64,000 bases of DNA, taken from NCBI GenBank assembly GCA_001179505.1, contig CDMY01000496.1, positions 1,179-65,178 on the forward strand. The letters are read 5' to 3'. Under the pieces are notes generated by a model. The model saw nothing but the letters and a program-made list of their open reading frames with translations, ran no database searches and was not told the origin of the DNA. Source of the stretch: Vitrella brassicaformis CCMP3155 (Eukaryota > Protista > Chromerida). A program made the position numbers and the translations under genes. Within the stretch, counting starts at the first letter, position 1; the number at the start of each line of letters is the position of its first letter. Below, one piece after another: positions 9,016 to 64,000 of this stretch.

Positions 9016-9315
9016 NNNNNNNNNNNNNNNNNNNNNNNNNNNNNNNNNNNNNNNNNNNNNNNNNNNNNNNNNNNNNNNNNNNNNNNNNNNNNNNNNNNNN
9101 NNNNNNNNNNNNNNNNNNNNNNNNNNNNNNNNNNNNNNNNNNNNNNNNNNNNNNNNNNNNNNNNNNNNNNNNNNNNNNNNNNNNNNNNNNNNNNNNNNNN
9201 NNNNNNNNNNNNNNNNNNNNNNNNNNNNNNNNNNNNNNNNNNNNNNNNNNNNNNNNNNNNNNNNNNNNNNNNNNNNNNNNNNNNNNNNNNNNNNNNNNNN
9301 NNNNNNNNNNNNNNN
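9016..9315. other. Assembly gap (300 N) with duplicated flanks
   Basis: The 40 nt left of the gap (8976-9015, acctggtctcaagcc...agggg) recur at 9316-9355, next to a G/A-rich low-complexity run. Confidence 0.9.
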
Positions 9316-38306: not shown

Positions 38307-38342
<36 letters not shown>

Positions 38343-40292
38343 TGTGTGTCACCAGGTTTGTGTTGCATCGACGAGTTTGACAAGATGGACGACAGCGCAC
38401 GGTAGAAACCAGCAGCTCACCGTGCACACGCACATGCATTCACCTGAGAGTTGGGCTATGTGTGTGTGTGTGAAGTGCGATATTGCACGAGGCGATGGAG
38501 CAGCAGACGGTGTCCATCGCCAAGGCCGGCATGGTCTGCTCACTCAACGCCAGAACCGGTGGGTGCCTGGTGGGGAGTCTGTGCATCCCGAATGGGTGGA
38601 TGGATTTTCTCTCTTTCTCTCTCTCCTGCGTGTGTGCACATTCAGCTGTGCTCGCGTGTGCGAATCCCGTGCTGTCGCGATACGACCCCACCAAAGTACA
38701 CACAGAGACACAGACACACACAGGTGGATGGGATGCCCCTTTGTCCTGTGTGTGATGTGTGTGCAGTCGATAGTGGCCAACATCAACCTGCCGCCCACGC
38801 TGATGTCGCGATTCGACCTCATCTACCTCATGCTGGACAAGGCAAACAACCAACCACACACCCACTAGCCTCCACACACACACACACACACACAGGGGGG
38901 GAGACAGACACGGACACACACCACTCTCTGTCTCTCTGTGTGTGTTGGGTGTGGTGTGTGTGTTCAGTCCAACGCAACGACCGACGAGAAGTTGGCCCGG
39001 CACATCGCCCTCCTCTACTGCGGCGATGCGGCATACAACATGGGGGATGGCGAGGGAGGGGAGGGGGAGGGGGAGGGGGAGGTGGAGTTGCTCGACCGCA
39101 AGCTGCTCGCAAACTACATCAGCTATGCTCGCACGTACGCACACACAAAGGGACCAATGGGTGGGTCAACACACGTCGTGGGTGTTGTCTTGTGGGTGGG
39201 GTGTTGTTGTGCAGTCACGTGAAGCCCCGGCTCACGAATGACGCCGCCGAAGCACTGCAGGACGTATGTATGCCCGTTGATGCCCACCAGCACTCACTCG
39301 CCCATAACTCTCTCCCTTTCTCTCTGTCTGTCTGTCTGCCTGCCTGTCTGTCTGTGGGTATGCTTGTCTACAGTCCTATGTTGCGATCCGCCAGGAGGGA
39401 GGGAGCTCGCGAAGGCAACCATACACACATCCACTCACCCACCAGTCTATCTTCGGGTGTGTGTATTGGCTGCACGCAGGAATATCACGGCAACCCCCCG
39501 TCAGCTCGAGAGTTTGATCCGCATCAGCGAGGCCCTCGCGCGTATGCAGCTCAAGGAGATGGTGGAGCCAGCACACGTGCGGGAGGCCGTCAGGTAACCA
39601 CACACACACAGACAAGACACACACACACGTGTTTGTATCTCTCTCTGTGCGTGCAGGTTGATGAGGGCCGCCACGTTCAAAGCCGCCGTCGACCCACACA
39701 CAGGCACCTATACACATACACACACACACACACACACGCGGAGAGAGACGGAGAGAGAGAGAGAGAGAGAGAGACGCGGATGGATGGATGGATGGGTGCA
39801 TCTGTCTGTTTGTGTGCAGGTCGCATAGACATGGACGCGTTGTTCACGGGCACGAGCAACCTCGCGAGAGAACGGACCAACAAGATCGAAGAGGCCACCG
39901 TAGAGGCCCTGGTCCGTCTGCCACCGAGCCACATACATTCAAAAACACATATATCCATGTGTGTGTCAGAGGAATGCCCCCAATGGGATGAAGGCCGAGG
40001 ACCTGCTGCGCGAAGTCAACCAGACCCTGGTACGTACGCATTATTGATTGACGCGTCCGTGGACGAGAGCAAAGCTCCGATCTGTGTGTGGCGTGGTGTG
40101 TATTTAGACGGCTGAGGAGCTCGAGACCCTCGACCAGATCGAATTTGACTCGCACCTGGCGGGACTCGTCCGCAACAGTACGCACAGACAGAGAGAGAGA
40201 GAGAGAGCGACCCATCCATCCATGTGTGTGTGATTGCAGGTGTTATTCGTGAGACAGCACACAAGGTGTACCTCCTGGTGGTCACGGAGTGA
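34501..40292 (+). CDS. MCM4: DNA replication licensing factor MCM4
   Basis: [39 protein letters not shown], Walker A GDPSTAKSQ (37927-37950), IDEFDKM, HEAMEQQTVSIAKAG, arginine finger MSRFDLIYL, ITATPRQLESLIR and DPHTGRIDM. More than 20 short introns. Confidence 0.93.
36997..37296. other. Assembly gap (300 N) inside an MCM4 intron
   Basis: Flanked by poly-C on both sides. The exons on either side join in frame (KT|FVDAYNIQK), so no coding sequence is missing. Confidence 0.8.
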
Positions 40293-47267: not shown

Positions 47268-49296
47268 ATGGACAAGTGACTCACGCAATCAGTCACTGCT
47301 GCAGACACACAGACACAACACATGCATCTATCGATTTCAACGTGCACATCTTCCAGGCATACCTTTTGGACTCGTTCGGCCCCCTCCGCTCCCTCTGAAA
47401 TCTCCCTCCCATCTGCGAGCTAAGCTTGCAAACCTGCCGTGCGCGTGAAGGGTGGTTACGACGGCGGAGGAACCAAACAGGAGGAAGAAGCGACGTGTCG
47501 ATGGTGCTGATGGAGATCTCCCCGACAACGATGGAGATCTGCACAAGACCGCCACCTCGCCCCCTCCCGCCCTCCCCCTGCACATCGGCGACGCTGCATC
47601 CCCGAGTGCCCATCTCTACGGCAGCCCTGAGGCGAATGCGCCATCGTACCAGTCGACCAAGCGGCCTCTCACGCCGCCCCTCACCCAATGCTCTGACAGT
47701 GAGTGCCTGCTCGTGGATGTCGTCTTTGAGGCCGTCTGGGCCTTTCCGCACACCGACGTCGTCGAGGAGGTGGTGAGAGAGCCGGGCAGTCTGTTTGTCG
47801 GTGACCGGAGATGCCATCTCGACAACAGGTGGGCAGAGATCTCTCATTTCTGTCACAGGTTGGGCCACGTGTCTGTGTTGTGTGTTGTGTTTGTTCATTC
47901 ATCTTTGTGAGCATCGCTGAAGGGCACTCACTCTTTCTTGATGTGTTTGTTGTGTGCGTCAGGCATGTCGGCTCATCAAGCAGTGGTGCCGCTGACCAGC
48001 AGCCAGCCACACCAGACACCATCCAATACCAGTAGCCCACCCACACCCACCCCTTCACACACACAACCCTACACACAGCGCGTGGCATACTCGTGTGTAT
48101 GTGTGTGCGTCAGAGAGGGAATCGTTGAAGCTCGGCGGTGAGGGACGCAAGGCTCTGATCAAGAGGCTCAGAGAGTTCCACGAAGGCAGCAAGGACCTCG
48201 TGGTGACCTCACCAACCACACTCAGACGAGGCACTGCTGGCCGGTGTGTGAACTGCCCTCTTGTCTCTCCGGTGGCTTGGTTTGCTGGTTGGGTGCAGGA
48301 GGAGACGCTGCTCGATCAAGGTCTCAAATACGGCGAAATCCGCAACGCCACTCTGCCACAGGTAGACAGACACAGACACAAACACACACATGAGCATCTG
48401 TGTGTGTGTCTGTCTGTCTGTCTGTCTGTCTGTGTGTCTGTCAGCTGCTCAAGATGGCTTACGTGTGTGGTCTGTGGGAGGAGGCCGTGCAGCTGCACCG
48501 CGACCGCATGAAGCGATGCACACCCAGACCACTGACCCTCCCACCGCCCCCAGGCTGCGGCCTCACCGCACACCAGCGGCCCCCGCCATTCCCCTCCGGC
48601 CCCCGCCATTCCCCTCACCCCCACTAGTAAGCCCCAGGAACCATGGCCACATCCACTGGTCGCCCGGAACCATCTGAGCGTGCGGGCGCAGTGTGCCTGC
48701 AAGCCAACAGGGGATGTCCCCTCACCACAGGTGCCGCAATCGTCGCACTTGAAGGAGGATCACCCCGGCAGCCGCCTGGCGCACGAGGGCGTCGGGGCAC
48801 GCCGCGCCTGGTGTTCTCCGAGAACGTCAAGGACTTCTTCAACAAACACTACCAGATGACGGAGCCGCCCTCCGAGTCGGTGTTGCTGGGCGGTAGCCTG
48901 GAGGAGCTGACCAGACCAACCACGAAAACCGTCAAGCGGAAACATGTAGGCGCTGAACAAGGGGGGAGAGAGGGCTGCGGGGTCGGACCACTGTTGTCTG
49001 TGTGGGTGGCGGCCATCGTGTATCGCATCTCTGGAGCAGTCGGCCATTCGTGCGAACCACAGCACTCCCTCGGCTCGGCGGCAGTCGCGTACCAGGAACA
49101 GGACGAGGAGCAGGCTGACGTGCAGTCCATCTTAGCGCCCAAGGCCAAGCAGAAGAAAACGGCCAAGAAGAAGCCAAAGGCGGCAGCACCGAGGGGCTGG
49201 GCGAGGGCGAAGGCCAGAAGCCGAGGCAGGGGAGGAGGGGGAGGAATTGTTGGCGGCATCGACAGCGGCAGCACAGCCGGCGGCGTATTATGGTGA
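47268..49296 (+). CDS. Lineage-specific hypothetical protein with NLS-like basic stretches, 3' end 49296 or 49348
   Basis: MDK|VVTTAEEPNRRKKRRVDG..., shared module VDVVFEAVWAFPHTDVVEEVVREPGSLFVGDRR, helical exons (ESLKLGGEGRKALIKRLREFHEG; LLKMAYVCGLWEEAVQLHRDR), and a Lys-rich tail. Confidence 0.55.
47713..47858 (+). repeat. 146-nt coding module, copy of 19930-20075
   Basis: gtggatgtcgtctttgaggccgtctgggcctttccgcacaccgac...gcagagatctctcatttctgtcacag, ending at a splice donor. Confidence 0.9.
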
Positions 49297-49821
49297 CGAC
49301 GATGAGGACATGAGGATGGCAAGCGATCACGACAAGGCGGATGAGTGAGAGGAGGCGGGTGGTGTAGATAGTCGTGGCTGACTTCTTGATGCATGGACAC
49401 GTGCGTGACTGACCGCATTCATGGGTTGCGTGAATGCGTTCATTCGCAGAGCACAAAAGTCCGCTTCCAAGCGGCGGGCTGCATGCAGGCCGCCTAGGGT
49501 ATTCCATGAAACCGCTGGGAAGGGTGCCGTCTCTCTGAACGTACTGAAGGGCACGTCCACAGACAACCTGCCGGCGATGCAGCGCGCCGGCCTCTACTCA
49601 TAGCCTCTGCTGCTTGCCAGGTACGATACGCATCAACAAATACTGCGTGCATGCCTGCTCCCTAGTACAGATCAGATCCCGCCATGTTCCATTACCTTCG
49701 TCCCCTCCTCAGGCTGATTAACTGTATTGTGGCCATGCCCAGGGAGATCCCCTCCCGGGACGACCCATCCCAGATCATCGTGGTTGATTGACTTATCTCT
49801 CTTCCCTTCTTGTGTTTGGCC

Positions 49822-52190
49822 ATGCCGAACACTCAGAGCTCATCGTGGAGCAGCTGGGAGGTGCCCGCCAGGCCAGTGCCTGAGGACCTCAAGCACCTGC
49901 ACCAGCTTTATGGCGACTCGGCCTTCGGCAAGACGCTCGCCAAGTGGGCCCAGGAGATACCTGACGCGGCTGCCATCACGTGGCTCAACGGTGATGGGGA
50001 GCCGGCCGAGGTGTTCACATACAGCGAGCTCTTCAGCAAGGTGCAGCGGCTCGGCGCCTATCTCACCGAGGATCTGGGATTGGAGATGGGTGACCGGGTG
50101 ATCCTGTGCTATCCGCCCGGCGCGGACTTCATCCTCGCCTTCCTCGCATGCCTTTACACGGGCATCGTTGCGGTGCCTGTGTATCCCCCCGCCCCCAACA
50201 CCACCAACATCGATGTGCCGCGCTTCTGCGACATCGCCGAGAACGCTGGGGTGCGCTATTCGCTCACCAACACCGCCTACCAGAAGATAGCCCTGGTCGT
50301 GGGCACGCTCAGCAAGGACAGCAGGTGGAGATCTATCGAGTGGATACTCACCAGCGACGCATTCAAGAGGACGGGTGCCGACAAGGGTGGTGACGAGCAC
50401 GAGACCGTCTACACCCCCCCGTGCATCGGCCTGAGCGACATCGCGTTGCTGCAGTTCACGTCGGGGTCCACATCGACGCCCAAGGGCGTGATGGTGACGC
50501 ACGGCTCGCTGCTGCACAACGTCCACTGCTGCATCACGGCCTACGGCTGGGACAGCAAGATCGACGACCCCACCATCCCCAACATCACAGCGACGGGGCA
50601 GCCCTACAGTAGGATGCGCGAGATAATGATGCAGCGTCACGAGATCAGCAACCGGGTGCGGGGTCACCGCATGCGGTGCTTCTCGTGGCTTCCCGTCTAC
50701 CACGACATGGGGCTCATCGGATTCCTCTGCACGCCCCTCTTCTTTGGATTTGAAGCTGTCCAGATGTCGCCGCTCGACTTCGTCATGAAGCCGCACCTGT
50801 GGCTACAAGGTGCCTGCACAAATCCCGAGCCGACCACCGAGTGATGCTCATGTGGTGTTTGTGTGTGGTTTTATTCTCATGGAATAGGCATGAGCCGATA
50901 CAAGGCTGGCGCGTGCGCGGTCCCAAATTTTGCCTTCGAGTTGGTGACGCGCAAGATGCCCGACAGCGTGTTTGAGGAGCTGGACCTCAGTCACGTGTCC
51001 GGCTTCCTGTGCGGGGCAGAGCCAATCAGAGGGGCCATTGTAGATAAATTCGTCAAGGTGCGTGTGTGCGCGTGAGTGGGTGCAGGCGGCCAATGATGAA
51101 TGAAAGAGAACACGATGGCTGTCTGTTTGTGTCTGTGTTGTTGTCCATTCAGAAATTCGCGAGGAAGGGTGTGACTCGCAGCAAGGTTCTGCCAGCGTAT
51201 GGGTTGGCCGAGAACACCCTGTGCGTGTCGGCCCGCAAAGACATTGACAGCGAGCCGTTCATCATCAGTGTCAACGCCGAGAAATTGAGAAACCAAGTAC
51301 AAGAACAAACACATAGCAGACATCCGTTGCACACATCTGCGTGCGTGTGGCCAGGGTGTGGTTGAGTTGGTGGATGAAGCTGACATGGATGGCAGTCATG
51401 AGGGCGAGTACCAGCGGCTCGTCGGATGTGGCGTACCCCTCTCTGGAATAGACGGTACACACACCACTGACCGACGATATCGATCACGAGATAGGCATAG
51501 TTGTACCGCCTGCTTCGTTCAGTTCGCATTGTTGACTCCGAAGCGATGAAGGAGCTGCCGGAGGGCCAATGTGGTGAGGTGTGGGTCATGTCTGGCAGCA
51601 CGGCCCGCGGCTATTTCAACCAGCCCGACGAGGCGCAGGAGTCGTTCCACGGGCAGTGCATCTACCTGACAGGCGACAAGTCGGAGCCCTTGTACCTGCG
51701 GACAGGTGACATGGGCTTTTTCTACAAGGGAGAGCTCTTCATCGCCGGGCGCATCGAGGACATGATCATCGTCAATGGTCGCAACTTCTTCCCGCAGGTC
51801 ATCGAGGAGGCCGCAGAGAGCTGCGAGTCGGTCCGCAAGGGGTGCGTGGCGGCCTTCTCGCTGGAGGTGGATGATCAGGAGCGGCTGGGGCTGGCGGTCG
51901 AAATCAAGATGGAGGAGGGGAGCGGCTTTTCGATGATCTGGGGACGGCTGTCGCAGCTGCGGCAGGCGTTCACCAGCACGGAGTACAAGGCGATTAGTCG
52001 CGAGATATGCAAGGTCGTCTCGGTCAAGATCGGACTTCCCGTCTTCCACATATGGCTGCTCAGACCAAGAACCATTCCAAAGACGACAGCAGGTACATGT
52101 ATGTGACATACACACATGCCGACGGAGAATGTCACATTCATCTATTGTTGTCCATCTTTCTTCCCTGTCAGGCAAGGTTCGGCGCTCCAA
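49822..52190 (+). other. PKS loading fatty acyl-AMP ligase (FAAL) domain
   Basis: LLQFTSGSTSTPKGVMVTH, WLPVYHDMGLIG, PNFAFEL, CGAEPI, AYGLAENT, FAAL-type insertion ISVNAEKLRNQGVVELV, LRTGDMGF and IPKTTAGK. Confidence 0.9.
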
Positions 52191-55100
52191 GACGCGTGAG
52201 GTTCTCCTTGACAACAAGGACCTGGCAGGTCTCATCTGGGATGAGGTCGTGGGGGAACCCGATGCGGACAAGAAGGAGGTGTCCGCAGCTGCTCGAGAGA
52301 GGCCGCCCGTCGCTCCCTTTGCGACACGAAAGGCAGCACGGCACGGCGACGGGAAGGACAAGGGCCTTTCAGTCGCACAGAGGAGGGTCCAGTCTGCAGT
52401 GATGGCGTCGGCGGGCAAGATCTTGGACACCGACGTATGCGACTTCGACACGCCCCTGCACAAGCTGGGTGTCGACTCCATCAGGGCGCTGGAGTTCGCC
52501 GAGGACGTGTCGAGGGAGCTGTCAATGACTCTCGAGCCGGCGTTCGTCTTCAACCAGCCAACTATGAATGACATCATCGACTTCCTTGTCGGGGAGCTCG
52601 AGGGCCGGGCCGCCGAGGAGCCCGCCAAGGAAGCCACACTCGCGAGCGGCATCCGGGCAGACGAGCCGATCGCCATCGCTGGGGCGGCGTGTCGGCTGCC
52701 CGGCGGAGTGACAACCCTTGCATCCTTCTGGGAGCTGCTTAGCACCCGCCGTGATGCGATAGTGGAGGTGCCGCTGACCCGCTGGAACATCGACGAGGTC
52801 TATGACGCCGACCGTGACATGGATGGCAAGATGTACATCAGAGAGGGAGGCTTCATCGACGACGCAGAGATGTTCGACAACGCCTTCTTCAACATCGGCC
52901 CCGCTGAGGTCAGCTGCATGGACCCCCAGCAGCGGCTGATGCTTGAAGTGGGCTACGAGGCCTTCCACAGCGCGGGCCTCAGCCGCGAGAAGCTCATTGG
53001 TCAGGACATGGCCGTGCTCATCGGGTGCTGCTCCTTTGACTGGTACGACGTATACAACCAGACTGGCCTCAGCGTGAGCAGCTACAGCGCGACCGGAGTC
53101 GCCGCATCAATCCTCTCCAACCGCATCTCCTACATCCTCGGTCTCAAGGGCCCCTCCATGACCATCGACACGGCATGCTCATCTTCATTGGTGGCCATGG
53201 ACGTGGCGGTCAAGGACATGCGCATGGGGGTGTGCCGCGGTGCCCTGGTGGGAGGCGTCAACATGATGCTCAATTCACAAGTCACGGTGGCGTTGTGCAA
53301 GGCACGCATGATGGCGCCAGACGCCAGATGCAAGACGTTTGACGCCAAGGCCAACGGCTACGTGAGGGGCGAGGGTGGGGTTGCTATCATCCTCAAACAA
53401 CTCTCAGACGCATCACCCGACCTGGTCGGCGTGTTGGCCTGTCTGAGAGGCACAGCTGTCAACCACGGAGGGAAGACAGCCAGCCTGACAGCGCCAAGCG
53501 GTCCAGCCCAGCAGCAGGTCATCAGGTCGGCGCTGCACCAGGCCGGCCTCCAGCCATCATCAATCGACTTCGTGGAGTCGCACGGCTCGGGCACGTCACT
53601 TGGCGATCCAATCGAGGTGAATGCGATCAAGGCCGTGTTCGCCGGCGGGCGAGACTCGAAACTCCCTCTCCTGCTGGGCGCCCTCAAGACCAACATCGGG
53701 CATCTGGAGGGAGCCGCGGGTATTGCGGGGGTCCTAAAGGCCGTACTCGTGCTGCAGATGAAGCAGGCGCCCCCCAATCTCCACTTCAACTCACTCAACC
53801 TGTACATCGACACCGAGGGCTTCCCGGTGGTCTTCCCCACCGAGCCCGTGCCGCTCGTCTCTGGCCTGCCCGCCAAGGACCGCATGGTCGGCGGCGTCAG
53901 CTCCTTCGGCTTCGGGGGCACGAGTGCACATGTCATCCTCGAGGAGGTGCCACTAGGTCTGACTCGCCAGTCCGAGGCTATCATGGAGCTGACCAAGTCA
54001 GGTGTCAGCCTCACGATCGAGACGTGCCTCGCCAAGCTCAAGGGCACTCACCAGTGGAACCACCGGAGCTTTCCGTGGGTCGAGGCGGCCCATCCTGCGC
54101 TCGGTCGCCGGCACACGACCCCGACCGGCCTGACCTTCGAAGCCACCCTGCGACAAGACCTCAAGGCGCTCATCCAGGACCACGTCGTCCTCGGTCAGAC
54201 ACACACACCTCCTTGCTGCTTGAAAAACACATCATGTGGCTGGCTGTGTTTCTATGTCTTGATTTGTACACAGGCGTGCCTCTGATGCCCGGCGCAGGGT
54301 TCATTGACATTATGGCCGGTGCAGGCCTGGCGGCTGCGCAGGCGGAGAGGGGCGCCAAGACGTCATCGGCGGAGGAGCTGGTACATCTGGAGGAGGTGTC
54401 GTTCGAGCGGCCGCTCATGCTGGCCAAAGCTGACGACAAACAGCCTGAGCTGGCGAAGATGCCCACCCTCCGTGTCACCGTCGAGAAGCAGGCGACCACC
54501 GATACCGACGCTGCCATGCCCCCCATGGCCGTCGAGATCTCCACACGGGCGCCAGGCGAGGAGGACTTCGTGCCGCATGCCACCGCCCGTTTGGTGAAGG
54601 TCGCGGGTGCGGGGGACGGCGAGAGAGACCTGGTGGAGGATCTCACGGCCCTCAAACACCGGTGCAACAAGGTCGCCCCAGTTACAGACTTCTACACGCA
54701 GCTCAAGGAGATCGGTGTGGCGTACGGTCCGAGGTTCCAGACGGTGAGGGAGCTGTTGGTGTCGGACGACCAGGCTCTGGCCCTGCTCAAGCTCGACCCG
54801 CCCATCAAGCCATTCGAGGGAGGCTTCCGGCTGCATCCCGCCATCCTAGACGGTGCGCTGCAGTCAGCCGCTGCGGTACTCGCGGCCGATCAGTCCGGCA
54901 AGGGGAATACCAAGGCACTTCTGGTGCCNNNNNNNNNNNNNNNNNNNNNNNNNNNNNNNNNNNNNNNNNNNNNNNNNNNNNNNNNNNNNNNNNNNNNNNN
55001 NNNNNNNNNNNNNNNNNNNNNNNNNNNNNNNNNNNNNNNNNNNNNNNNNNNNNNNNNNNNNNNNNNNNNNNNNNNNNNNNNNNNNNNNNNNNNNNNNNNN

Positions 55101-58100
55101 NNNNNNNNNNNNNNNNNNNNNNNNNNNNNNNNNNNNNNNNNNNNNNNNNNNNNNNNNNNNNNNNNNNNNNNNNNNNNNNNNNNNNNNNNNNNNNNNNNNN
55201 NNNNNNNNNNNNNNNNNNNNNNNNNNNNCGCGCCTAGTGTCAAGGAAGATATCGACACGTTGCTCGCGGAGGGACGAGGGGAGACGGTCATGTGTCTGCT
55301 TGGACTGAGCTCGGACGTTGATGCGCAGCACGTTCTCCTCGGGGCCATGCAAGTGGCAGCAGCCCTCATTGGCGGCGACTCGGGCTCGCAACACAACAGC
55401 GGTGCCCTCTTCTTCACGTCCAGCATCCACAGGATGCACGCCCGTGATCCCGTCGAGGGGCGACCGGTCCATGCGGGCATCTGGGGCATGCTGCGAACCG
55501 CGAGGCTCGAGCTCACAAATCAGAGGCTCGAGCGGCAGGATGCAGCTCGCCTCGTGACTGTGGATTTGGACGGACCAAGCTCGGCAAGATGGGAGGACCA
55601 GCTGCTCGGCGTCGCGGCCAACTCATCACGGCTCAGAACTGAGGAAGAGACGGAAATTGCCGTGCGCGCCGACGTTATCTACGCGCATCGACTGATTAAG
55701 AGCTCCCTTGTGGCGCGAGGGCCCGTTGAGCTGGAGCTGTCCGGGAGAGGATCGCTGAAGAGCATGATGAAGTTGCGCGCTCAAGAGCCTGAGGATCGGA
55801 GAGAGCTCGCGCCTGGAGAGATGGAGATCCGCGTGAGGGCTGCGGGACTCAACTTCCGGGACCTTCTTCTGGTGCTAGGCGCTTGTGCAGCTGCTGAAAG
55901 AGTGTGGGTCGATGCCGGAGGGGAGTGCAGTGGGACCGTCACGCGTGTGAACGGCGATCCATCTGATGCCGTGTTCAAAGTGGGGGATGAGGTGTATGGC
56001 GTAGTCAGTGGGTGCCTCAAGACCTACGTCACGACCAGAGCCGCTGGGCCAGTGGTCCTGAAGCCGCCCAACATATCCTTCGGTGCAGCTGCTGGGCTGC
56101 CGCTTATCGTCGGCACGGTGGAGGTCTGCCTTCGAGACATCGCACACGTGAAAGCTGGCGACCGTGTGCTGATCCACGCTGCGACAGGTGGAGTTGGATT
56201 GACCGCCGTGCAGCACTGCATCAGGGCAGGAGCCATCGTCTACGCGACGGCCGGCAGCGACCGCAAGAGGACTCTCCTGCGACATCTAGGCGTCCAGTAC
56301 ACCACAAGCTCAAGAGACCCGCATCGCTTCCAGTCGCACATGCAATCGTTCCTGGGAAACGAAGATCGGCTGGATGTCGTCTTGAACTGCCTCAGCGGTC
56401 ACTTCATCGGCTTCTCTTTGGCGCTACTGCGTCCCGGTGGATGGTTCGTCGAGATCGGCAGGCGAGGCATCTGGAGCCGGGAGAAGATGGCTGAAGAGCG
56501 CGCCGACGTCAACTACGAAGCTATTGCTCTCGACGTCATGATCCGTGACGACCCTGTGTGGTTCCGCGGCATGCTGACCCGCATCAACTGCATGGTCGCG
56601 ACGGACCAGCTCACCCCTCCTCCCCTTCACGCCTTCGATCTCAGCGACGAGCACGAAGGGGGCTCAGCAGCGTTCACCTTCATGCGGCGAGCGCTCCACA
56701 TCGGCAAGATTGTCCTCACCGTGCCCTCTGCTCCGGGGCTCGAGGTGATCGCGGCACGAACGACGGAGAAGCGTTCACGGAGCTGCCCTTATGCGTACGT
56801 GATCACTGGCGGTCTTGGCGGCCTTGGTCTCGTGGTGGCTGCATGGCTGATCGAGCATGGGGCCAGGAGCATCATCCTTGCATCGCGACGAGGCCAACCT
56901 ACTCAGGAGATGCAGGAGAGCAAAGAATGGCAGCGGCTCACGACCGTCATGCGGAGGGCCGAAGCGACGGAGGGGTCGTCCATCACTCTGCGCGCAGCCA
57001 AGTGTGACGTGAGCTCCATCGAGGACTGCCGCGCCCTGATCACGCAAGTCCAAGAGGAGGGACTGGTGCCCAAGGCGATCCTGCATGCTGCTGGCACATT
57101 GAGTGACGCAGGCATCGGCAATCAGACGCTCGAGACCATAGCGGATGTCTACGGCCCCAAAGTCCAGGGCGCCTGGGCCTTCCACGACCTACTCATTGAG
57201 AGCGGCGTGCAGGCCGACACCTTCCTGGTCTTCTCGTCCATTGCTGGNNNNNNNNNNNNNNNNNNNNNNNNNNNNNNNNNNNNNNNNNNNNNNNNNNNNN
57301 NNNNNNNNNNNNNNNNNNNNNNNNNNNNNNNNNNNNNNNNNNNNNNNNNNNNNNNNNNNNNNNNNNNNNNNNNNNNNNNNNNNNNNNNNNNNNNNNNNNN
57401 NNNNNNNNNNNNNNNNNNNNNNNNNNNNNNNNNNNNNNNNNNNNNNNNNNNNNNNNNNNNNNNNNNNNNNNNNNNNNNNNNNNNNNNNNNNNNNNNNNNN
57501 NNNNNNNNNNNNNNNNNNNNNNNNNNNNNNNNNNNNNNNNNNNNNNNGCTGGTCTGCTGGGCAACTTCGGCCAATCGAACCATGCAGCAGCAAACGCATG
57601 CCTCGACGCTCTGGTGACATACCGACGATCCCAGGGCCTCGCGGGCTCCAGCATCCAGTGGGGCGCCTGGACAGAGCAAGGCAAGGCGGCACAGCTCGTC
57701 ACTCAACGACAGCTCGAGAAGATGGGCTTCGCTGCCGTCACCAATGACATCGGCCTTCGGAGCCTCTGGGCCGTCCAGGCTCACATCGCAACCATCGACG
57801 TCATCGGCTGCCAGCCCATTCGTTTCGAGACCTACTTCCGTGTCATCCCCCGCACGCCCTTCTTCTCCCGTTTGGAGGTCAAGGAAGCCAGGTCTAAGGC
57901 TGGCGGACCTTTCTTGGCTCGCACAGCTCTTTGTGAAGAGGGCTGGGCCCCGTTGGAGGATCCCGTCAGCCGCGAGGCAATGAGAACGGCTCTGGACAGT
58001 GTGGGGGTCCTGCTCACTCACGGGGCCGCGGAGCTGTATGATGCTCTTCGGCAAGAGGAAGGCCTCAAGCATGTGGAAGTGTGTTCGAGCGTGGAGGCAC

Positions 58101-61100
58101 TGGCAAATGCAGCGAGGCGTCTCCGTGACACACCAGGAGGGGTCGTTCTAGTGCATCGATGTCGTGATCATGCGGAGGATGCAGCGCATCAGAGGGAGCA
58201 GCTTTGCGCTTCTATGAAGGCGCTGAGGTCTTCGGGTCCTGATATGCCTGTGGGGGTTCTCGTGTTGGTCGATAAGCCTGATGGTGATGAGCCCTCTTAC
58301 GACAGCTTCCTCTCATTCAAGAGTCTCGAGGGCGGTGATGATGCCGCAAAGTGCACCATCCGGTCGCTGGATTTCATCGGGACGCCTCCATCCCTCGCAG
58401 CGACTGCCTCAGTGACGTGCACGGTCATCAGCATGATGGTCTCGAAGACGCAAGACGGACCCGCTGGGTCCGAAGTGCCATGGGCCTATCGGGACGGCAT
58501 GCTGTTGGCACCACGTGAGTATCGGACATTGAGGGACATCCCTCTGTCCATCGACCTGTTCCCAGCTGCCCTCCTGTCGGACACAAGGACATCCTCAGGC
58601 ACGGGAGTGCACGTCAAGTGGGCAAACGATTGGCAGGTGGCACACAGCAGCACACCAGCTTCCTCACCATCCGCGCACCAAGTGGTGATGTGCATCCATG
58701 CACTGGCCCTTCCGCCCTCGGCACAAGACGCCGATGATCGCCTGGCTGGTCCCTTGGCATGCGGCGGCATTGTTGCGGAGGTCGGAGATGCCGTTTCACA
58801 GCTGAAAGTGGGCGACACGGCGGCTGGCTGGCTTGAGGATGCTGCACAACAGGTCAGAGCGGACAGGGCCGTCACGGATGCACGCCTTCTGAAGCGCATC
58901 GATACCACTGAGACGCCGCCAGAGGGCAGCTGGACACTCGTCGGGCATCTCGAAGCATCAAGGCGGAATCTCGGGGCCCAGGCGGCTGTAGGCGAGAATG
59001 GGCTTCGCATGCTGCTTGACAGTGTCACCGCAGATGGTCGGGTGACGGTTTGTGAAGAGGACGTGGAAGACACTTTCCGCCTGTCAGATTCCCTGGGGAA
59101 GCAGCGAGCGGACAGTGACGAGATTCTTGTCCTTCGAATCGGTCGAGGTGCTCCCGCTGGTGCTGTGGACGGCTCATCACCTCCACTGTCCCTGAGTGAG
59201 CACCTGTCCGCCTCTATTCAGCGTGCGATGGAGTCGGATGAAGCACGGCAGTGGGCTGATGGAATTGTGCAAGTTGAGGAGGCCTGTCGTGCATACTGTG
59301 AGTCGGCCATCAAGGCTGTCCGAGAAGCTGATGTGGTCCATCCACATCACCGCAAGGCGTATCGAAGCCTCGTCGACGCTCTGCGGGGCTCAGATCGGNN
59401 NNNNNNNNNNNNNNNNNNNNNNNNNNNNNNNNNNNNNNNNNNNNNNNNNNNNNNNNNNNNNNNNNNNNNNNNNNNNNNNNNNNNNNNNNNNNNNNNNNNN
59501 NNNNNNNNNNNNNNNNNNNNNNNNNNNNNNNNNNNNNNNNNNNNNNNNNNNNNNNNNNNNNNNNNNNNNNNNNNNNNNNNNNNNNNNNNNNNNNNNNNNN
59601 NNNNNNNNNNNNNNNNNNNNNNNNNNNNNNNNNNNNNNNNNNNNNNNNNNNNNNNNNNNNNNNNNNNNNNNNNNNNNNNNNNNNNNNNNNNNNNNNNNGG
59701 CATGGGCCTATCGGGACGGCATGCTGTTGGCACCACGTGAGTGTCGGACATTGAGGGACATCCCTCTGTCCATCGACCTGTTCCCAGCTGCCCTCCTGTC
59801 GGACACAAGGACATCCTCAGGCAAGGGAGTGCACGTCAAGTGGGCAAACGATTGGCAGGTGGCACACAGCAGCACACCAGCTTCCTCACCATCAGCGCAC
59901 CAAGTGGTGATGTGCATCCATGCACTGGCCCTTCCGCCCTCGGCACAAGACGCCGATGATCGCCTGGCTGGTCCCTTGGCATGCGGCGGCATTGTTGCGG
60001 AGGTCGGAGATGCCGTTTCACACCTGAAAGTGGGCGACACGGCGGCTGGCTGGCTTGAGGATGCTGCACAACAGGTCAGAGCGGACAGGGCCGTCACGGA
60101 TGCACGCCTTCTGAAGCGCATCGATACCACTGAGACGCCGCCAGAGGGCAGCTGGACACTCGTCGGCCATCTCGAAGCATCAAGGCGGAATCTCGCGGAC
60201 CAGGCGGCTGCAGGCGAGAATGGGCTTCGCATGCTGCTTGACAGTGTCACCGCAAATGGTCGGGTGACAGTTTGTGAAGAGGACGTGGAAGACACTTTCC
60301 GCCTGTCAGATTCCCTGGGGAAGCAGCGAGCGGACAGTGACGAGATTCTTGTCCTTCGAATCGGTCGAGGTGCTCCCGCTGGTGCTGTGGACGGCTCATC
60401 ACCTGCACTGTCCCTGAGTGAGCACCTGTCCGCCTCTATTCAGCGTGCGATGGAGTCGGATGAAGCACGGCAGTGGGCTGATGGAATTGTGCAAGTTGAG
60501 GAGGCCTGTCGTGCATACTGTGAGTCGGCCATCAAGGCTGTCCGAGAAACTGATGTGGTCCATCCGCATCACCGCAAGGCGTATCGAAGCCTCGTCGACA
60601 CTCTGCGGGGCTCAGATCGGGACGCTTCCACACGGAGTCCGAAGTTCTCTCTCGAGAGCGCTCCGCAGCAAGTGTCTCACGAGGCCAGCCTCGCGCAAGC
60701 TTGCAGCTCTCACCTGATCGACGTCCTGAAGGGTGCCGTCGATCCACTGGAGCTCATCTTCCCTGAAGGATCCATGGACTTCGCGACCGCCATGTACCAA
60801 GACACCATCCCATCACAGTTCAGCAACGGTGTGGTCATGGAGGTCGTCGACGCAATATGCAGACATCGGCTGTCAAGTGCCACCGCACAGCGAGTGCACA
60901 TCTGCGAGGTGGGCGCTGGCACTGGTGGCACGACCTCTTGCGTCCTGCCCAAGCTCGATGCCAGCCGGACGACCTACTTCTTCACTGATATAAGCGAGTA
61001 CTTCCTGCGCAACGCTGCCAAGCGGTTCGTCGACTACCCCAACGTTGACTACTGCCTGTTCGACGTCGAGAGGGATCCCCGTCACAGCGGCCTTGCGACA

Positions 61101-64000
61101 GGCATCTTCGACCTGGCGATTGCCGTCAACGTGCTGCATGCCACGCAAGATCTCCGTGCGACGCTTCGCAACGTGAAGGCGTCTCTGAAGCCTGACGGCC
61201 TTCTCATCATATCGGAGCTGACGCGGCACAGCTTCATGCTGCAGACAACATTCGGGCTGGTCGAGGGCTGGTGGCGCTTCATTGACTCGGACCTGCGGCG
61301 TGACGGTCCTCTTCTGCCCCAGTCCGGCTGGCAAAGGGCCTTCCACGACACGGGATTCGTCTTGGAGTACGCAACGCCCAGCGAGGGCATCTTCGGACAT
61401 CAGAGTGTCATGGTCGTGCGCAACGCAGCGGACAGCGGCGTTGCTGTGCCGAGACCCCTGCCGTCCAGCCCTGTCGTGACCTCAAGGAATCAATGCGTCC
61501 TGGTGTGCGGCGATATTGATGCTATTGCCTTGGCAGCAGCTCGAGCCCTCATTCAGCAGGGATGCAAGACCCTCGTCGTTGCCTCATGGGGACCGCCTCC
61601 TGCCAATCTGGCCGCGTGGGTGACTCACGTGTCTGACGGCATCCGCGTGACGGCCATGAGACTGCGATACGATGCACGAGATCGCGGCATCCGGTGCGGG
61701 GGTATGTCGTGGTGTGAAGCCTTGGCCAAGAGGGAGGGGCCACCCATCACGCGGTGTCTCTGCGTTGTGAATGGACAGTCAGCAGAGGACGACGACCAGC
61801 AGCTGATCCGGGCTCGATCATTGGTTGAGACCGTGCAGGCCCAAGCTCCTGAATCGACCGTCGTCACCCTCGAGGCATTGGGCAAGTTTACCGCAGAATC
61901 CCACACTCTCCCTTCTTCGCCTCTGGTTGAGGCTCTCAGCCGCACTCTGAAGGCCAAGCCCTCTCATCGATCGGCTCTCGTTCGATGGGATGCCTCGCTG
62001 CTTCAACTGGATGCCTGCTTCCTCACTGAAGCGCTGCAAGTGTCCCTGAGCTCGTCGCCCTCGCCAGGCGCCCGACACGTCTTGAGAGTGCAGCGAACCA
62101 GTCAGACGGAAAGGACGCCGCCTGCAGGAGAAGAGACAGGACGAACTCCAACGGCGGGAGTCATTGGCCTGAGTTCGTCACAGCTGCGATCTTACATCCA
62201 GTCGGTGGTAGTTGAGTCGGCGGCTGGTGTGTTAGGACAGGAAGTGGTCGACGTCACTGCGCCGCCTCTGGATTCCCCTCTGCAGGAGCTGGGCATCGAC
62301 TCACTCGGCGCCGTCNNNNNNNNNNNNNNNNNNNNNNNNNNNNNNNNNNNNNNNNNNNNNNNNNNNNNNNNNNNNNNNNNNNNNNNNNNNNNNNNNNNNN
62401 NNNNNNNNNNNNNNNNNNNNNNNNNNNNNNNNNNNNNNNNNNNNNNNNNNNNNNNNNNNNNNNNNNNNNNNNNNNNNNNNNNNNNNNNNNNNNNNNNNNN
62501 NNNNNNNNNNNNNNNNNNNNNNNNNNNNNNNNNNNNNNNNNNNNNNNNNNNNNNNNNNNNNNNNNNNNNNNNNNNNNNNNNNNNNNNNNNNNNNNNNNNN
62601 NNNNNNNNNNNNNNNGATCGCCTGGCTGGTCCGTTGGCAAGTGGCGGCATTGTTGCGGAGGTCGGAGATGCCGTTTCACACCTGAAAGTGGGCGACACGG
62701 CGGCTGGCTGGCTTGAGGATGCTGCACAACAGGTCAGAGCGGACAGGGCCGTCACGGATGCACGCCTTCTGAAGCACGTCGATACCACTGCGACGCCGTC
62801 AGAGAGCAGCTGGACACTCGTCGGCCATCTTGAAGCATCAAGGCGGAATCTCGGGGGCCAGGCGGCTGTAGGCGAGAATGGGCTTCGCATGCTGCTTGAC
62901 AGTGTCACCGCAGATGGTCGGGTGACGGTTTGTGAAGAGGATGTGGAAGACCCTTTCCGCCTGTCAGATTCCCTGGAGAAGAGGCGAGCGGACAGTGATG
63001 AGATTGTTGTCCTTCGAATCGGTCGAGGTGCTCCCGCTGGTGCTGTGGATGGCTCATCACCTGCACTGTCCCTGAGTGAGCACCTGTCCGCCTCTATTCA
63101 GCATGCGATGGAGTCGGATGAAGCACGGCAGTGGGCTGATGGAATTGTGCACGTCGAGGAGGCCTGTCGTGCATACTGTGAGTCGGCCATCAAGGCTGTC
63201 CGAGAAACTGATGTGGTCCATCCACATCACCGCAAGGCGTATCGAAGCCTCGTCGACGCTCTGCGGGGCTCAGATCGGGACGCTTCCGCGCGGAGTCCGA
63301 AGTTCTCTCTCGAGAGCGCTCGGCAGCAAGTGTCTCACGAGGCCAGCCTCGCGCAAGCTTGCGGCCCTCACCTGATGGAAGTCCTGAAGGGTGCCGTCGA
63401 TCCACTGGAGCTCATCTTCCCTGAAGGGTCCATGGACTTGGCGACCGCCATGTACCAGGACACCATCCCATCACAGTTCAGCAACGGTGTGGTCATGGAG
63501 GTCGTCGACGCAATATGCAGACATCGGCTGTCAAGTGCCACCGCACAGCGAATGCACATCTGCGAGGTGGGCGCTGGCACTGGTGGCACGACCTCTTGCG
63601 TCCTGCCCAAGCTCGATGCCAGCCGGACGACCTACTTCTTCACTGATATAAGCGAGTACTTCCTGCGCAACGCTGCCAAGCGATTCGTCGACTACTCCAA
63701 CGTTGACTACTGCCTGTTCGACGTCGAAAGGGATCCCCATCACAGCGGCCTTGCGACAGGCATCTTCGACCTGGCGATTGCCGTCAACGTGCTGCATGCC
63801 ACGCAAGATCTCCGTGCGACGCTTCGCAACGTGAAGGCGTCTCTGAAGCCTGACGGCCTTCTCATCATATCGGAGCTGACGCGGCACAGCTTCATGCTGC
63901 AGACAACATTCGGCCTGCTCGAGGGCTGGTGGCGCTTCATTGACTCGGACCTGCGGCGTGACGGTCCTCTTCTGCCCCAGTCCGGCTGGCAAAGGGCCTT
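49822..64000 (+). CDS. Giant modular type I polyketide synthase, FAAL-primed and AT-less, truncated by the window end
   Basis: Introns at 50810-50887, 51058-51152, 51297-51354, 51455-51522, 52093-52171 and 54194-54273 give one continuous frame. Domain motifs for FAAL, ACP, KS, DH, ER, KR, C-MT and ACP are listed separately. The frame from 59721 stays open to the window end. Confidence 0.93.
52387..52590 (+). other. PKS ACP domain 1 (loading)
   Basis: DTPLHKLGVDSIRALEF...FNQPT, with the phosphopantetheine Ser codon at 52477-52479. Confidence 0.9.
52663..53946 (+). other. PKS ketosynthase domain with intact Cys-His-His triad
   Basis: EPIAIAG, DPQQRLMLE, TIDTACSSS (Cys at 53176), ESHGSGT, NIGHLEGAAG and VSSFGFGGTSAHVILEE. 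Confidence 0.95.
54091..54928 (+). other. PKS dehydratase domain
   Basis: HPALG, DHVVLG|VPLMPG (HxxxGxxxxP split by an intron), YGPRFQTV and HPAILDGALQ. Only about 48 aa separate it from the KS. Confidence 0.9.
54929..55228. other. Assembly gap (300 N) between the DH and the KR structural subdomain
   Basis: The flanks do not overlap. The frame is preserved across the gap, possibly by chance, and the true length is unknown. Confidence 0.9.
55720..56720 (+). other. PKS enoylreductase domain
   Basis: EIRVRAAGLNFRD, GECSGTVTRV, VLIHAATGGVG, VYATAGS, FVEIGRR and HIGKIVL. Confidence 0.9.
56795..57830 (+). other. PKS ketoreductase catalytic domain with a Tyr-to-His change at the YxxxN position
   Basis: YVITGGLGGLG, ILHAAGTLSD, KVQGAW, FSSIAG / AGLLGNFGQSNHAAAN (CAT at 57581-57583) and SIQWGAW. 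Interrupted by the 300-N gap at 57248-57547. Confidence 0.88.
58479..60620 (+). repeat. Near-identical 920-bp direct repeat inside the PKS (58479-59398 and 59701-60620)
   Basis: Both copies start catgggcctatcgggacggcatg and end ggctcagatcgg. Scattered substitutions, e.g. cagctgaaag versus cacctgaaag. The copies are separated by the 300-N gap at 59399-59698. Confidence 0.92.
60480..61420 (+). other. SAM-dependent C-methyltransferase domain of the PKS (unit 2)
   Basis: DPLELIFPEG, ICEVGAGTGGTT (60906), YFFTDISEYFL, FDLAIAVNVLHAT, LKPDGLLIISE and FGLVEGWWRFIDSDLR. Confidence 0.9.
62180..62315 (+). other. PKS ACP domain 2 (truncated by gap)
   Basis: IQSVVVESAAGVLG...DSPLQELGIDSLGAV, with the Ser codon at 62301-62303. 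Confidence 0.85.
62316..62615. other. Assembly gap (300 N) within ACP2, before repeat copy 3
   Basis: The left flank ends mid-ACP and the right flank starts mid-repeat, so real sequence is missing. Confidence 0.9.
62616..64000 (+). repeat. Third copy of the PKS internal repeat (matches 59958-61342)
   Basis: Collinear from gatcgcctggctggt to caaagggcctt, with private substitutions such as gcaagtggc versus gcatgcggc. Confidence 0.92.
63140..64000 (+). other. Second complete-looking C-methyltransferase copy (unit 3), runs off the window
   Basis: Near-identical to 60480-61342 at offset 2658: EVGAGTGG (63564), VNVLHAT and FGLLEGWWRF. Confidence 0.88.

What the first reader, a model, noticed from the sequence alone, without database searches (positions are those of the whole stretch)
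49822..64000. FAAL-primed, AT-less (trans-AT-type) methylating megasynthase in a chromerid-like genome
Seen in the sequence: FAAL-ACP loading, an intact KS, then only about 48 aa (ending WNHRSFPW) before the DH, so there is no room for an acyltransferase. DH, ER, KR, C-MT and ACP follow. Established: acyl-ligase-ACP loading is known from Cryptosporidium FAS1, whose extension modules carry cis-AT domains, while AT-less modules characterise trans-AT PKSs of bacteria, chlorophytes and haptophytes. Inference: this enzyme extends a long-chain fatty acid and installs SAM-derived alpha-methyl branches, giving a methyl-branched lipid or polyketide (possibly a cyst/wall lipid). It would need a free-standing AT, and none is in this window.
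Basis: partly seen in the sequence, partly recalled or inferred. Interest (0 to 1): 0.8.

Follow-up and report, generated by a model that had tools for sequence, protein, structure and literature searches.

The report
AT-less methylating megasynthase of Vitrella
This is the 5' part of a giant fatty-acid/polyketide-type synthase gene of the alga Vitrella brassicaformis whose first module really lacks its own acyltransferase and carries a methyl-adding domain, but such synthases have already been catalogued in chromerids, so it is a well-documented example and not a new kind of enzyme.

Summary
From 49822 the + strand encodes FAAL-type ligase, ACP, an intact KS, a 44-aa linker ending WNHRSFPW, then DH, psiKR, ER, KR, about 510 aa with no database match, a CurJ-type C-methyltransferase, a decayed KR-like Rossmann region and an ACP. 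No AT is encoded anywhere in the window.

The window is Vitrella brassicaformis or a very close relative. A paralogous Vitrella module has a 340-aa malonyl-type AT exactly where the window has 46 unique bases, so the AT-less junction is real and not an assembly skip.

"Trans-AT type" is true only as a description. The KS groups with Chromera velia FAS/PKS modules, in which AT-less and AT-bearing modules sit in one protein (Cvel_19857: three KS, one AT). A free-standing AT is therefore not required.

The gene is badly assembled. It has four placeholder 300-N gaps, one provably empty, and at least three near-identical copies of the methyltransferase cassette. Module number and the 3' end are unknown. 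The KR reads His where the catalytic Tyr should be, 33 nt from a contig end. I found no evidence of expression.

Tomcala et al. 2020 already reported AT-less modules and two MT-bearing synthases in Vitrella. Verdict: a new member of a known kind, of modest interest.

The parts
49822..52092 (+). FAAL-type acyl-AMP ligase, five exons: 49822-50809, 50888-51057, 51153-51296, 51355-51454, 51523-52092. All introns are GT-AG and 58-95 nt long.
   Evidence: Pfam AMP-binding 9e-40. The best PDB matches are FAAL domains: 7r7e-g, 3kxw, FadD23, 3pbk, FadD28 and FadD32. The top NCBIfam hits are fatty-acid--AMP ligase families. Exon borders were read from the sequence.
52402..52587 (+). Loading ACP (GVDSI serine motif), in exon 6 (52172-54193).
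   Evidence: Pfam PP-binding 3.9e-9, residues 92-153 of ORF 52129-54282.
52663..53946 (+). Ketosynthase with Cys-His-His intact.
   Evidence: Pfam ketoacyl-synt 1.5e-82 and Ketoacyl-synt_C 2.1e-40. 56 % identical to a KS of Chromera Cvel_19857 and in its clade.
53947..54078 (+). 44-aa KS-to-DH linker with no AT. Bases 53945-53990 are unique sequence. From 53991 on it is the post-AT linker (GVSLTIETCLAKLKGTHQWNHRSFPW), shared at 94.8 % nucleotide identity with an AT-bearing paralog.
   Evidence: Junction alignment. blastn of the window against L001. Sequence read directly.
54079..54928 (+). Dehydratase, N-terminal two thirds, with a 80-nt intron at 54194-54273. After splicing it has HxxxGxxxxP (HVVLGVPLMP) and the LDGALQ motif. 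The C-terminal end is lost in the gap.
   Evidence: Pfam PKS_DH_N and PS-DH 2.5e-19. Intron read from the sequence.
54929..55228 (.). 300-N placeholder gap inside DH. By comparison with Cvel_19857 about 140 aa are missing here.
   Evidence: DH N-terminal piece ends at subject residue 878; the next piece starts at 1032.
55229..57247 (+). psiKR region, enoylreductase (about 55812-56717, GGVG cofactor motif) and the N-terminal part of the KR (from 56793, GGLGGLG motif).
   Evidence: Pfam ADH_N, ADH_zinc_N and KR 3.3e-32. 40-42 % identical over 600+ aa to the three modules of Cvel_19857.
57248..57547 (.). Spurious 300-N gap. The flanks overlap by 5 nt (GCTGG). Joined, they read SSIAGLLGNFGQSNHAAAN with no residue missing.
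   Evidence: homolog motifs.
57548..57865 (+). KR C-terminal part. The catalytic Tyr position reads His (CAT at 57581-57583), 33 nt from the contig end.
   Evidence: Pfam KR 5.4e-13. Nine KR domains of relatives all have Tyr at this position.
57866..59398 (+). Orphan region X1 (57866-58480) and copy A of X2 (58481-59398). It is an open frame with no Pfam, PDB or protein homolog. X2 holds a relic of the ER N-terminal lobe.
   Evidence: no hits. hhalign of X2 residues 60-142 against ER profile positions 4-94, P=1.9e-5. The AlphaFold model was unusable, pLDDT 39.
59399..59698 (.). 300-N gap between two contigs whose 920-bp ends are 98.5 % identical. These are different repeat copies, not a clean overlap.
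59699..62315 (+). Copy B of the cassette: X2 (59699-60659), C-methyltransferase (about 60660-61440), decayed KR-like Rossmann region (61455-62099), and the N-terminal half of an ACP (to 62315, GIDSL).
   Evidence: CurJ C-MT 7.7e-55, also DisA, AprA, PksCT and LovB. KR-like region: Pfam KR/adh_short E 0.03-0.07 and hhalign P=2e-4. ACP 94 % identical to the first ACP of P0199.
62316..62615 (.). 300-N gap that runs from mid-ACP to mid-X2. It must hide at least the rest of the ACP plus whatever precedes the next cassette. In the paralog, a KS follows this ACP.
62616..64000 (+). Copy C of the cassette: X2 from its residue 87 onward, and a C-methyltransferase cut off by the end of the window. 96.8 % identical to copy B.
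   Evidence: Pfam Methyltransf_12 6.2e-18.

Best explanation
This is the 5' part of a multimodular type I FAS/PKS-like megasynthase gene of Vitrella brassicaformis. It belongs to the chromerid/apicomplexan lineage of these enzymes.

Shown:
- The domain order is FAAL - ACP - KS - (no AT) - DH - psiKR - ER - KR - X1 - X2 - C-MT - decayed KR - ACP.
- At least two further near-identical X2/C-MT cassettes are present.

Inferred mechanism:
1. The FAAL adenylates a fatty acid and puts it on the loading ACP.
2. The KS condenses it with malonyl-ACP.
3. The malonyl group is loaded by an AT that is not part of this module. The most likely source is an AT-bearing module further along the same polypeptide or in a paralogous synthase. 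This is the arrangement in Chromera Cvel_19857, which has one AT for three KS. A discrete malonyl-CoA:ACP transacylase is less likely.
4. The C-MT methylates the alpha-carbon of the beta-ketoacyl-ACP with SAM.
5. KR, DH and ER then reduce the product, if the KR is active.

Repeated cassettes would give a multi-methyl-branched acyl chain.

Inferred history:
- The AT-less state is a secondary loss within a cis-AT lineage.
- The MT cassette looks like a duplicated psiKR-ER-KR-ACP segment in which a C-MT replaced the cofactor-binding part of the ER and the KR then decayed.
For: - Domains and motifs.
- No AT in six frames.
- AT present in a paralog: the Vitrella paralog P0199/L001 has a 340-aa AT (Pfam Acyl_transf_1 1.1e-54, GHSIGE and HAFHS motifs) between a KS end that is 83 % identical and a post-AT linker plus DH that is 94.8 % identical. 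The window has 46 unique bases at that place.
- KS placement: the KS lies in a clade (support 99) with all KS domains of Cvel_19857 and Cvel_6161, six AT-less and two AT-bearing including the window. The highest identity, 56 %, is to the AT-bearing module.
- Cvel_19857 architecture: 3 x [ACP-KS-DH-psiKR-ER-KR], with an AT in the third module only.
- MT: aligns to CurJ residues 149-390 with EVGAGTGGTT, NVLHAT and SELT conserved.
- Relics: an ER N-lobe relic in X2 and a KR N-terminal relic after the MT.
- Literature: chromerid synthases with AT-less modules and MT domains are already reported (PMC7464705). AT displacement plus module duplication has been proposed as the mode of algal PKS evolution (PMC4661987).
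Against: - No AT source has been identified. The rest of the gene is outside the window or inside gaps.
- The KR catalytic Tyr reads His. If that is real, the reductive loop of module 1 would be idle.
- Differences between cassette copies are about two thirds non-synonymous (10/14, 28/41), close to neutral.
- No transcript or independent contig covering the junction or the MT was found. There was no positive control for the two DNA scans, so this is inconclusive.
- X1 has no detectable homology, and both structure models were unusable.
- Substrate and product are entirely inferred.
Confidence: 0.6

Rival explanations
1. This is a true trans-AT system. All modules of the synthase lack an AT, and a dedicated free-standing AT encoded elsewhere in the genome loads every ACP, as in bacterial and chlorophyte trans-AT PKSs.
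For: - The only KS-DH junction visible here is AT-less, and no AT lies in the 64-kb window.
- The MT sits after the KR and before the ACP, which is the usual order in bacterial trans-AT modules (established knowledge).
- DisA, a trans-AT C-MT, is the second-best structural match.
- Shelest et al. 2015 find that most multimodular algal PKSs rely on trans ATs.
Against: - The KS is not in the group of bacterial AT-less KS domains. It sits with chromerid modules that mix both states.
- The nearest relatives keep one integrated AT per protein.
- A Vitrella paralog with a nearly identical post-AT linker and DH has an integrated AT.
- The only discrete AT listed for Vitrella in PMC7464705 is the plastid-targeted FabD, Vbra_21812.
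Confidence: 0.2
2. The locus is a decaying or non-functional paralog, or it is partly an assembly construct, and makes no product. The AT was deleted, the KR is dead, X1 and X2 are degenerate remnants, and the repeats are mis-scaffolded pieces of other genes.
For: - KR Tyr to His.
- Near-neutral substitution pattern between copies.
- X1 and X2 have no homologs.
- No transcript fragments were found.
- The assembly was made from short reads (velvet k=75) with placeholder gaps.
Against: - Open frames of 846, 1424 and 1601 codons with no stop or frameshift lie in 57-60 % GC DNA.
- Six clean GT-AG introns are present.
- Every catalytic motif other than the KR Tyr is intact.
- The three cassette copies align without any indel over up to 1385 bp.
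- The His codon lies 33 nt from a contig end, where base errors are plausible.
Confidence: 0.12
3. Module 1 is cis-AT after all, and its AT is hidden in one of the assembly gaps.
For: Four gaps of unknown true size lie inside the gene.
Against: - KS, linker and the start of the DH lie in one ungapped ORF. The canonical AT position between KS and DH is occupied by 46 unique bases.
- The first gap falls inside the DH, where homologs have only about 140 aa of DH.
- The second gap is provably empty.
Confidence: 0.03

Closest known systems
Chromera velia Cvel_19857 (UniRef A0A0G4G258, 6729 aa), listed as 'Type I FAS' in Tomcala et al. 2020
   Same: - Same KS clade, with up to 56 % KS identity.
- Same module core: ACP-KS-DH-psiKR-ER-KR.
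- Two of its three modules go from KS to DH through a short linker ending ...W..(K/R)..FPW, without an AT.
   Different: - Its third module has an integrated AT.
- The KR is followed directly by the ACP. There is no X1/X2, no C-MT and no decayed KR.
- The model contains no FAAL.
- Its AT-less linkers are about 23 aa shorter than the window's.
Vitrella brassicaformis paralog on CDMY01000508.1 (P0199, 1469 aa; probably Vbra_424.t1, judged by length only)
   Same: - Post-AT linker, start of the DH and the intron are 94.8 % identical in nucleotides.
- The ACP is 94 % identical in protein.
- The KS end is 83 % identical.
   Different: - It has an integrated malonyl-type AT (GHSIGE, HAFHS) of about 340 aa between KS and DH.
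- The KR is followed directly by the ACP.
- The catalytic Tyr of the KR is present.
Cryptosporidium parvum CpFAS1 / CpPKS1 (from established knowledge; not re-analysed here)
   Same: Acyl-ligase-ACP loading unit in front of type I modules. Proposed to elongate a preformed fatty acid.
   Different: Its extension modules carry cis-ATs. It has no C-MT.
Bacterial trans-AT PKS modules with C-MT (for example DisA of disorazole, PDB 6cca)
   Same: No AT in the module. The C-MT sits between KR and ACP. The methyl branch comes from SAM.
   Different: - The KS is not in that clade.
- The ER is integrated.
- The post-AT linker is retained, not a trans-AT docking region.
- It is a eukaryotic, intron-containing gene.
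CurJ C-methyltransferase (PDB 5thy), cis-AT curacin PKS
   Same: Best structural relative of the MT (E 1e-55). The SAM motif and the aligned His/Glu dyad are conserved.
   Different: In CurJ the MT lies between DH and ER/KR. Here it follows a complete ER-KR and is embedded in ER and KR relics.
Mycobacterial FAAL (FadD28) plus mycocerosic acid synthase / Pks2 systems
   Same: A FAAL-primed, fully reducing type I synthase that extends a long-chain fatty acid into a multi-methyl-branched lipid. This is a functional analogy. NCBIfam Pks2 and Pks13 models are among the best KS and ER-KR matches.
   Different: There the methyl branches come from methylmalonyl-CoA chosen by a cis-AT, and the FAAL is a separate protein.

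Membership tests
Type I modular FAS/PKS (chromerid/apicomplexan lineage) | The KS, with its Cys-His-His triad, falls in the clade of chromerid type I KS domains. | tested here: met
   FastTree of 174 KS domains. The window lies in a clade (support 99) with all 7 KS of Cvel_19857 and Cvel_6161. The next clade (support 99) adds other eukaryote-type sequences. Motifs read.
Type I modular FAS/PKS (chromerid/apicomplexan lineage) | Fused beta-processing domains in the order DH-psiKR-ER-KR, followed by an ACP. | tested here: met
   Pfam. Colinear alignments of 600+ aa to the three modules of Cvel_19857. The ACP is separated from the KR by the X/MT cassette.
Trans-AT PKS (bacterial sense) | Modules lack an integrated AT. 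| tested here: met
   No AT between KS and DH or anywhere in the window. Only one KS-DH junction can be seen.
Trans-AT PKS (bacterial sense) | The KS belongs to the separate trans-AT KS clade(s), distinct from cis-AT KS domains. | tested here: not met
   The window KS is nested in the 73-row clade that holds all 46 cis-AT KS domains sampled, not among the bulk of bacterial AT-less KS domains. The sample was limited to the 150 best-scoring megasynthases.
Trans-AT PKS (bacterial sense) | A dedicated free-standing AT is encoded with, or for, the synthase. | not testable with these tools
   The eukaryotic genome cannot be searched here. None lies in the window. Relatives use an integrated AT in another module.
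Fatty acyl-AMP ligase (FAAL) | ANL-superfamily adenylating fold that is closer to FAALs than to acyl-CoA ligases. | tested here: met
   The top PDB hits are FAALs (7r7e-g, 3kxw, FadD23, 3pbk, FadD28, FadD32). The top NCBIfam hits are fatty-acid--AMP ligase models for both pieces. All are below full-length cut-offs because only exon pieces were scanned.
Fatty acyl-AMP ligase (FAAL) | The FAAL-specific insertion that blocks CoA transfer. | not tested
   A 21-aa stretch (GVVELVDEADMDGSHEGEYQR, exon 4) lies where the insertion is expected. It was not aligned to a FAAL structure.
Fatty acyl-AMP ligase (FAAL) | Direct fusion to, or partnership with, a carrier protein. | tested here: met
   PP-binding domain about 100 aa downstream in the next exon.
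PKS C-methyltransferase | Class I SAM-MT core with the ExGxGxG motif and the His-Glu catalytic dyad of PKS C-MTs. | tested here: met
   Aligns to CurJ residues 149-390 (E 9e-56). EVGAGTGGTT is present. The His of NVLHAT and the Glu of SELT align with the CurJ residues, which are 26 apart.
Ketoreductase (SDR) | Catalytic Ser-Tyr-Lys/Asn, with Tyr in the GQxNYxAAN motif. | tested here: not met
   The window reads GQSNHAAAN. Nine KR domains of relatives have Tyr. The codon is 33 nt from a contig end, so a base error is possible.

The most novel reading that the evidence does not exclude
The locus would preserve two evolutionary events that have so far only been inferred for algal PKSs.

1. A recent conversion of a cis-AT module to an AT-less one. 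The evidence is a mosaic junction: an AT-less-type proximal linker joined to a post-AT linker that is 95 % identical to that of an AT-bearing paralog.
2. A lineage-specific cassette in which a bacterial-type C-MT replaced the cofactor lobe of a duplicated ER. The cassette was then amplified to at least three tandem modules.

Together these would give an alveolate a SAM-based route to multi-methyl-branched lipids of the mycocerosate type, possibly for its resistant cyst wall.
Probability: 0.2. Interest if true: 0.55.

Novelty: new member of a known kind. Interest (0 to 1): 0.3.

Why it matters
Chromerids are the free-living photosynthetic relatives of apicomplexan parasites. The type I FAS/PKS enzymes of those parasites are thought to make oocyst-wall lipids (Bushkin et al. 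2013, PMC3760245; only its title and abstract were seen here).

A clean comparison of an AT-bearing and an AT-less module, 95 % identical on one flank, within one genome is a concrete example of the "AT displacement" that Shelest et al. 2015 inferred from phylogeny.

A FAAL-primed synthase with an integrated C-MT would predict methyl-branched lipids, which have not been reported in chromerids. The word "branched" does not occur in Tomcala et al. 2020.

The class itself is already described: AT-less, MT-containing multimodular synthases in Chromera and Vitrella. The value here is therefore in the detail, not in concept.

Tried and rejected
1. Window's own gene model. I could not recover it. The three homolog searches are limited by length, and none returned a protein encoded by the window. 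P0049 has the same length as Vbra_23040 but turned out to be a metagenome protein.
2. Structure of the orphan region. Both AlphaFold jobs were single-sequence because no homologs exist. They gave pLDDT 37 and 39, so no fold search was run.
3. X1 and X2 against Pfam at E up to 10, against PDB sequences, and against proteins of 880-2800 aa. Nothing was found. blastp of X against the gene's own DH/ER/KR found nothing. Only profile comparison gave a signal: the ER N-lobe (P 1.9e-5) and the KR N-terminus (P 2e-4). X1 matched nothing.
4. Expression or independent assembly. Exact-match scans of JGI metagenome contigs with the junction 37-mer and an MT 41-mer found nothing. No positive control was possible. 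The best protein fragments were only 58 % identical.
5. Is the contig overlap across gap 59399-59698 a simple unmerged overlap? Rejected. The same 663-bp stretch exists in three distinct versions.
6. Foreign-looking base composition of the MT cassette. Rejected. The GC dips are caused by the N runs.
7. Is the window on the same scaffold as L001? No overlap was found. The question is unresolved.
Full report
WHAT IS THERE

The + strand from 49822 to the end of the window is one long coding region. The 5' part has six short GT-AG introns. The exons are 49822-50809, 50888-51057, 51153-51296, 51355-51454, 51523-52092, 52172-54193 and 54274 onward. From 54274 to 64000 the frame is open, apart from four runs of exactly 300 N at 54929, 57248, 59399 and 62316.

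Pfam on the separate pieces gives, in order:
- AMP-binding, 9e-40
- PP-binding, 3.9e-9
- KS N-terminal domain 1.5e-82 and C-terminal domain 2.1e-40
- the start of PKS_DH_N, in the same ORF as the KS
- PS-DH, 2.5e-19
- ADH_N and ADH_zinc_N (the ER)
- KR, 3.3e-32 and 5.4e-13
- about 510 aa with no match
- Methyltransf_12, 3.7e-18
- a second Methyltransf_12, 6.2e-18, at the window end

The adenylating domain is FAAL-like. Its best solved relatives are FAAL domains (7r7e-g, 3kxw, FadD23, 3pbk, FadD28, FadD32). The best NCBIfam models for both pieces are fatty-acid--AMP ligases.

The methyltransferase is a PKS C-MT. Its best match is CurJ (E 9e-56), followed by DisA, AprA MT2, PksCT and LovB. The SAM motif EVGAGTGGTT is conserved, and the His of NVLHAT and the Glu of SELT align with the CurJ pair.

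THE AT-LESS JUNCTION IS REAL

From the KS end motif (GGTSAHVI) to ...WNHRSFPW there are 44 residues. HPALGRR and, after the intron, HVVLGVPLMP (HxxxGxxxxP) of the DH follow. There is no gap in this stretch.

A phmmer --max search with a Vitrella AT against every open stretch of all six frames of the 64 kb found nothing (best E 1.3).

The decisive comparison came from a paralog. The protein search returned P0199, an unnamed protein of Vitrella brassicaformis CCMP3155. Its locus was fetched as L001, which is CDMY01000508.1:71796-90090.
- L001 14147-14427 matches the window's KS end at 83 %.
- L001 15653-16178 matches window 53991-54524 at 94.8 %. That stretch covers the post-AT linker, the DH start and the intron.
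- Between these two matches L001 has about 1.0-1.2 kb encoding an AT (Pfam Acyl_transf_1 1.1e-54; GHSIGE and HAFHS motifs, which by the established HAFH/YASH rule indicate malonyl specificity).
- At the same place the window has 46 bases found in neither sequence.

A unique junction sequence, shorter than the k-mer of 75 used for the assembly, argues against a chimeric assembly path. The identity jumps from 83 % to 95 % across the junction, and the proximal linker ("EEVPLG") resembles the AT-less Chromera linkers ("ESPPLG"). Both features suggest a mosaic made by recombination or gene conversion. This is inference.

WHICH ORGANISM, WHICH FAMILY

The near-identity to a V. brassicaformis contig, intron included, places the window in Vitrella brassicaformis or a very close relative. 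So does the exact identity of window 48456-49424 to a 969-nt JGI contig.

An exhaustive profile-free search with the KS gave 79,727 hits. Among the 150 highest-scoring megasynthases the closest are Chromera velia Cvel_19857 and Cvel_6161.

In a tree of 174 KS domains, the window KS lies in a clade (support 99) made up only of the seven KS domains of these two Chromera proteins. The highest identity, 56 %, is to an AT-bearing module. This clade sits inside the group that contains all 46 cis-AT KS domains sampled.

Mapping the window's own domains onto Cvel_19857 gives three modules of ACP-KS-DH-psiKR-ER-KR. Only the third has an AT. Cvel_6161 has one AT for four KS.

"AT-less" is therefore a state of individual modules within a cis-AT-derived lineage. 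It does not mean membership of the bacterial trans-AT family. An AT in another module is the most economical malonyl source.

In the relatives the KR is followed directly by the ACP. Here about 1400 aa intervene:
- X1, about 205 aa. No similarity to anything.
- X2, about 320 aa. Residues 60-142 match the GroES-like N-lobe of the ER profile (hhalign P 1.9e-5). No match to the ER cofactor lobe was found.
- The C-MT.
- A Rossmann-like stretch that matches only the first 70 positions of the KR (P 2e-4; Pfam KR E 0.07) and lacks the glycine motif and the Tyr.
- The ACP.

My reading, which is inferred, is that a duplicated psiKR-ER-KR-ACP segment had its ER core replaced by a C-MT and its KR then decayed. 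Both single-sequence AlphaFold models were unusable (pLDDT 37 and 39), and no homolog of X2 exists among proteins of 880-2800 aa.

STATE OF THE ASSEMBLY

All six gaps in the window are exactly 300 N. The published assembly has 931,689 N in 4177 contigs joined into 1064 scaffolds, which is about 300 N per join. Gap sizes are therefore placeholders.
- Gap 57248-57547 is empty. Its flanks overlap by 5 nt and the join reads SSIAGLLGNFGQSNHAAAN, colinear with the homologs.
- Gap 54929-55228 replaces roughly 140 aa of DH.
- Gaps 59399 and 62316 separate repeat copies. 58479-59398 matches 59701-60620 at 98.5 %, and 59958-61342 matches 62616-64000 at 96.8 %.
- The shared 663-bp stretch exists in three distinct versions, so at least three cassettes exist.

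After the copy-B ACP, the paralog continues into a KS. The window instead jumps into the middle of X2. The number of modules, their order and the 3' end are unknown.

POINTS AGAINST FUNCTION

- The KR has His (CAT) at the catalytic Tyr position, which is conserved in nine related KR domains. The codon lies 33 nt from a contig end.
- Differences between cassette copies are about two thirds non-synonymous.
- I found no transcript or independent contig for the junction or the MT. The DNA scans had no positive control.

Against a pseudogene stand the very long open frames, the clean introns and the complete absence of indels between copies.

COMPARISON WITH WHAT IS KNOWN

- Woo et al. 2015 noted modular FASI/PKS genes in both chromerids.
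- Tomcala et al. 2020 list all KS-bearing genes. [quoted passage not shown]
- Shelest et al. 2015 proposed AT displacement plus module duplication as the evolutionary mode of algal PKSs, and noted that MT domains are rare in algal trans-AT PKSs.

The kind is therefore known, and the gene belongs to a published, catalogued genome. What is added here:
- the exact anatomy of the locus
- the comparison of the AT-bearing and AT-less paralogs
- the relic-embedded MT cassette
- the warning about the assembly and the KR

VERDICT

This is a new member of a known kind, with interest 0.3.

The only join was an exon-exon join of two DH pieces, made in a local script and used to map domains on homologs.

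Noticed in passing
window 9016-9315, 36997-37296, 57248-57547: These 300-N gaps are flanked by contig ends that overlap exactly, by 40 nt, 12 nt (poly-C) and 5 nt. They are placeholder joins that hide no sequence.
   Followed up: yes
window 57581-57583: The KR catalytic Tyr codon reads CAT (His), 33 nt from a contig end. All nine related KR domains checked have Tyr. It is either an inactive KR or a base error.
   Followed up: partly
window about 36480-38865 (+): Exons of an MCM helicase gene: MCM_OB at about 36.76 kb and the MCM P-loop motif SRFDLIYLMLD at about 38.8 kb.
   Followed up: partly
window 48456-49424: This stretch is 100 % identical to a 969-nt JGI contig (sample 3300017148, Ga0186167_114293) that carries the 217-aa ORF 48643-49293. 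The ORF has no Pfam match and lies just upstream of the synthase gene.
   Followed up: partly
L001 14330-14748: In the AT-bearing paralog, a segment of about 210 bp spanning the KS end and the AT start is tandemly duplicated (92.6 % identity) and stays in frame. It is either a real duplication or an assembly artefact.
   Followed up: no
L001 16200-18295: The paralogous scaffold ends in a long satellite array that reads MSLCAHLRKHASTW... when translated. The array truncates that gene inside its DH.
   Followed up: no
window, many places (for example 34.9-35.9 kb, 39.8-40.2 kb): TGGATGGA-type microsatellites (translated WMDGWMDG) and CA-rich microsatellites are frequent in introns and intergenic DNA.
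   Followed up: no
P0109 (3920 aa): A four-KS, four-AT synthase annotated as a sperm whale (Physeter catodon) protein falls in the protist KS clade. It is probably contamination in that assembly.
   Followed up: no
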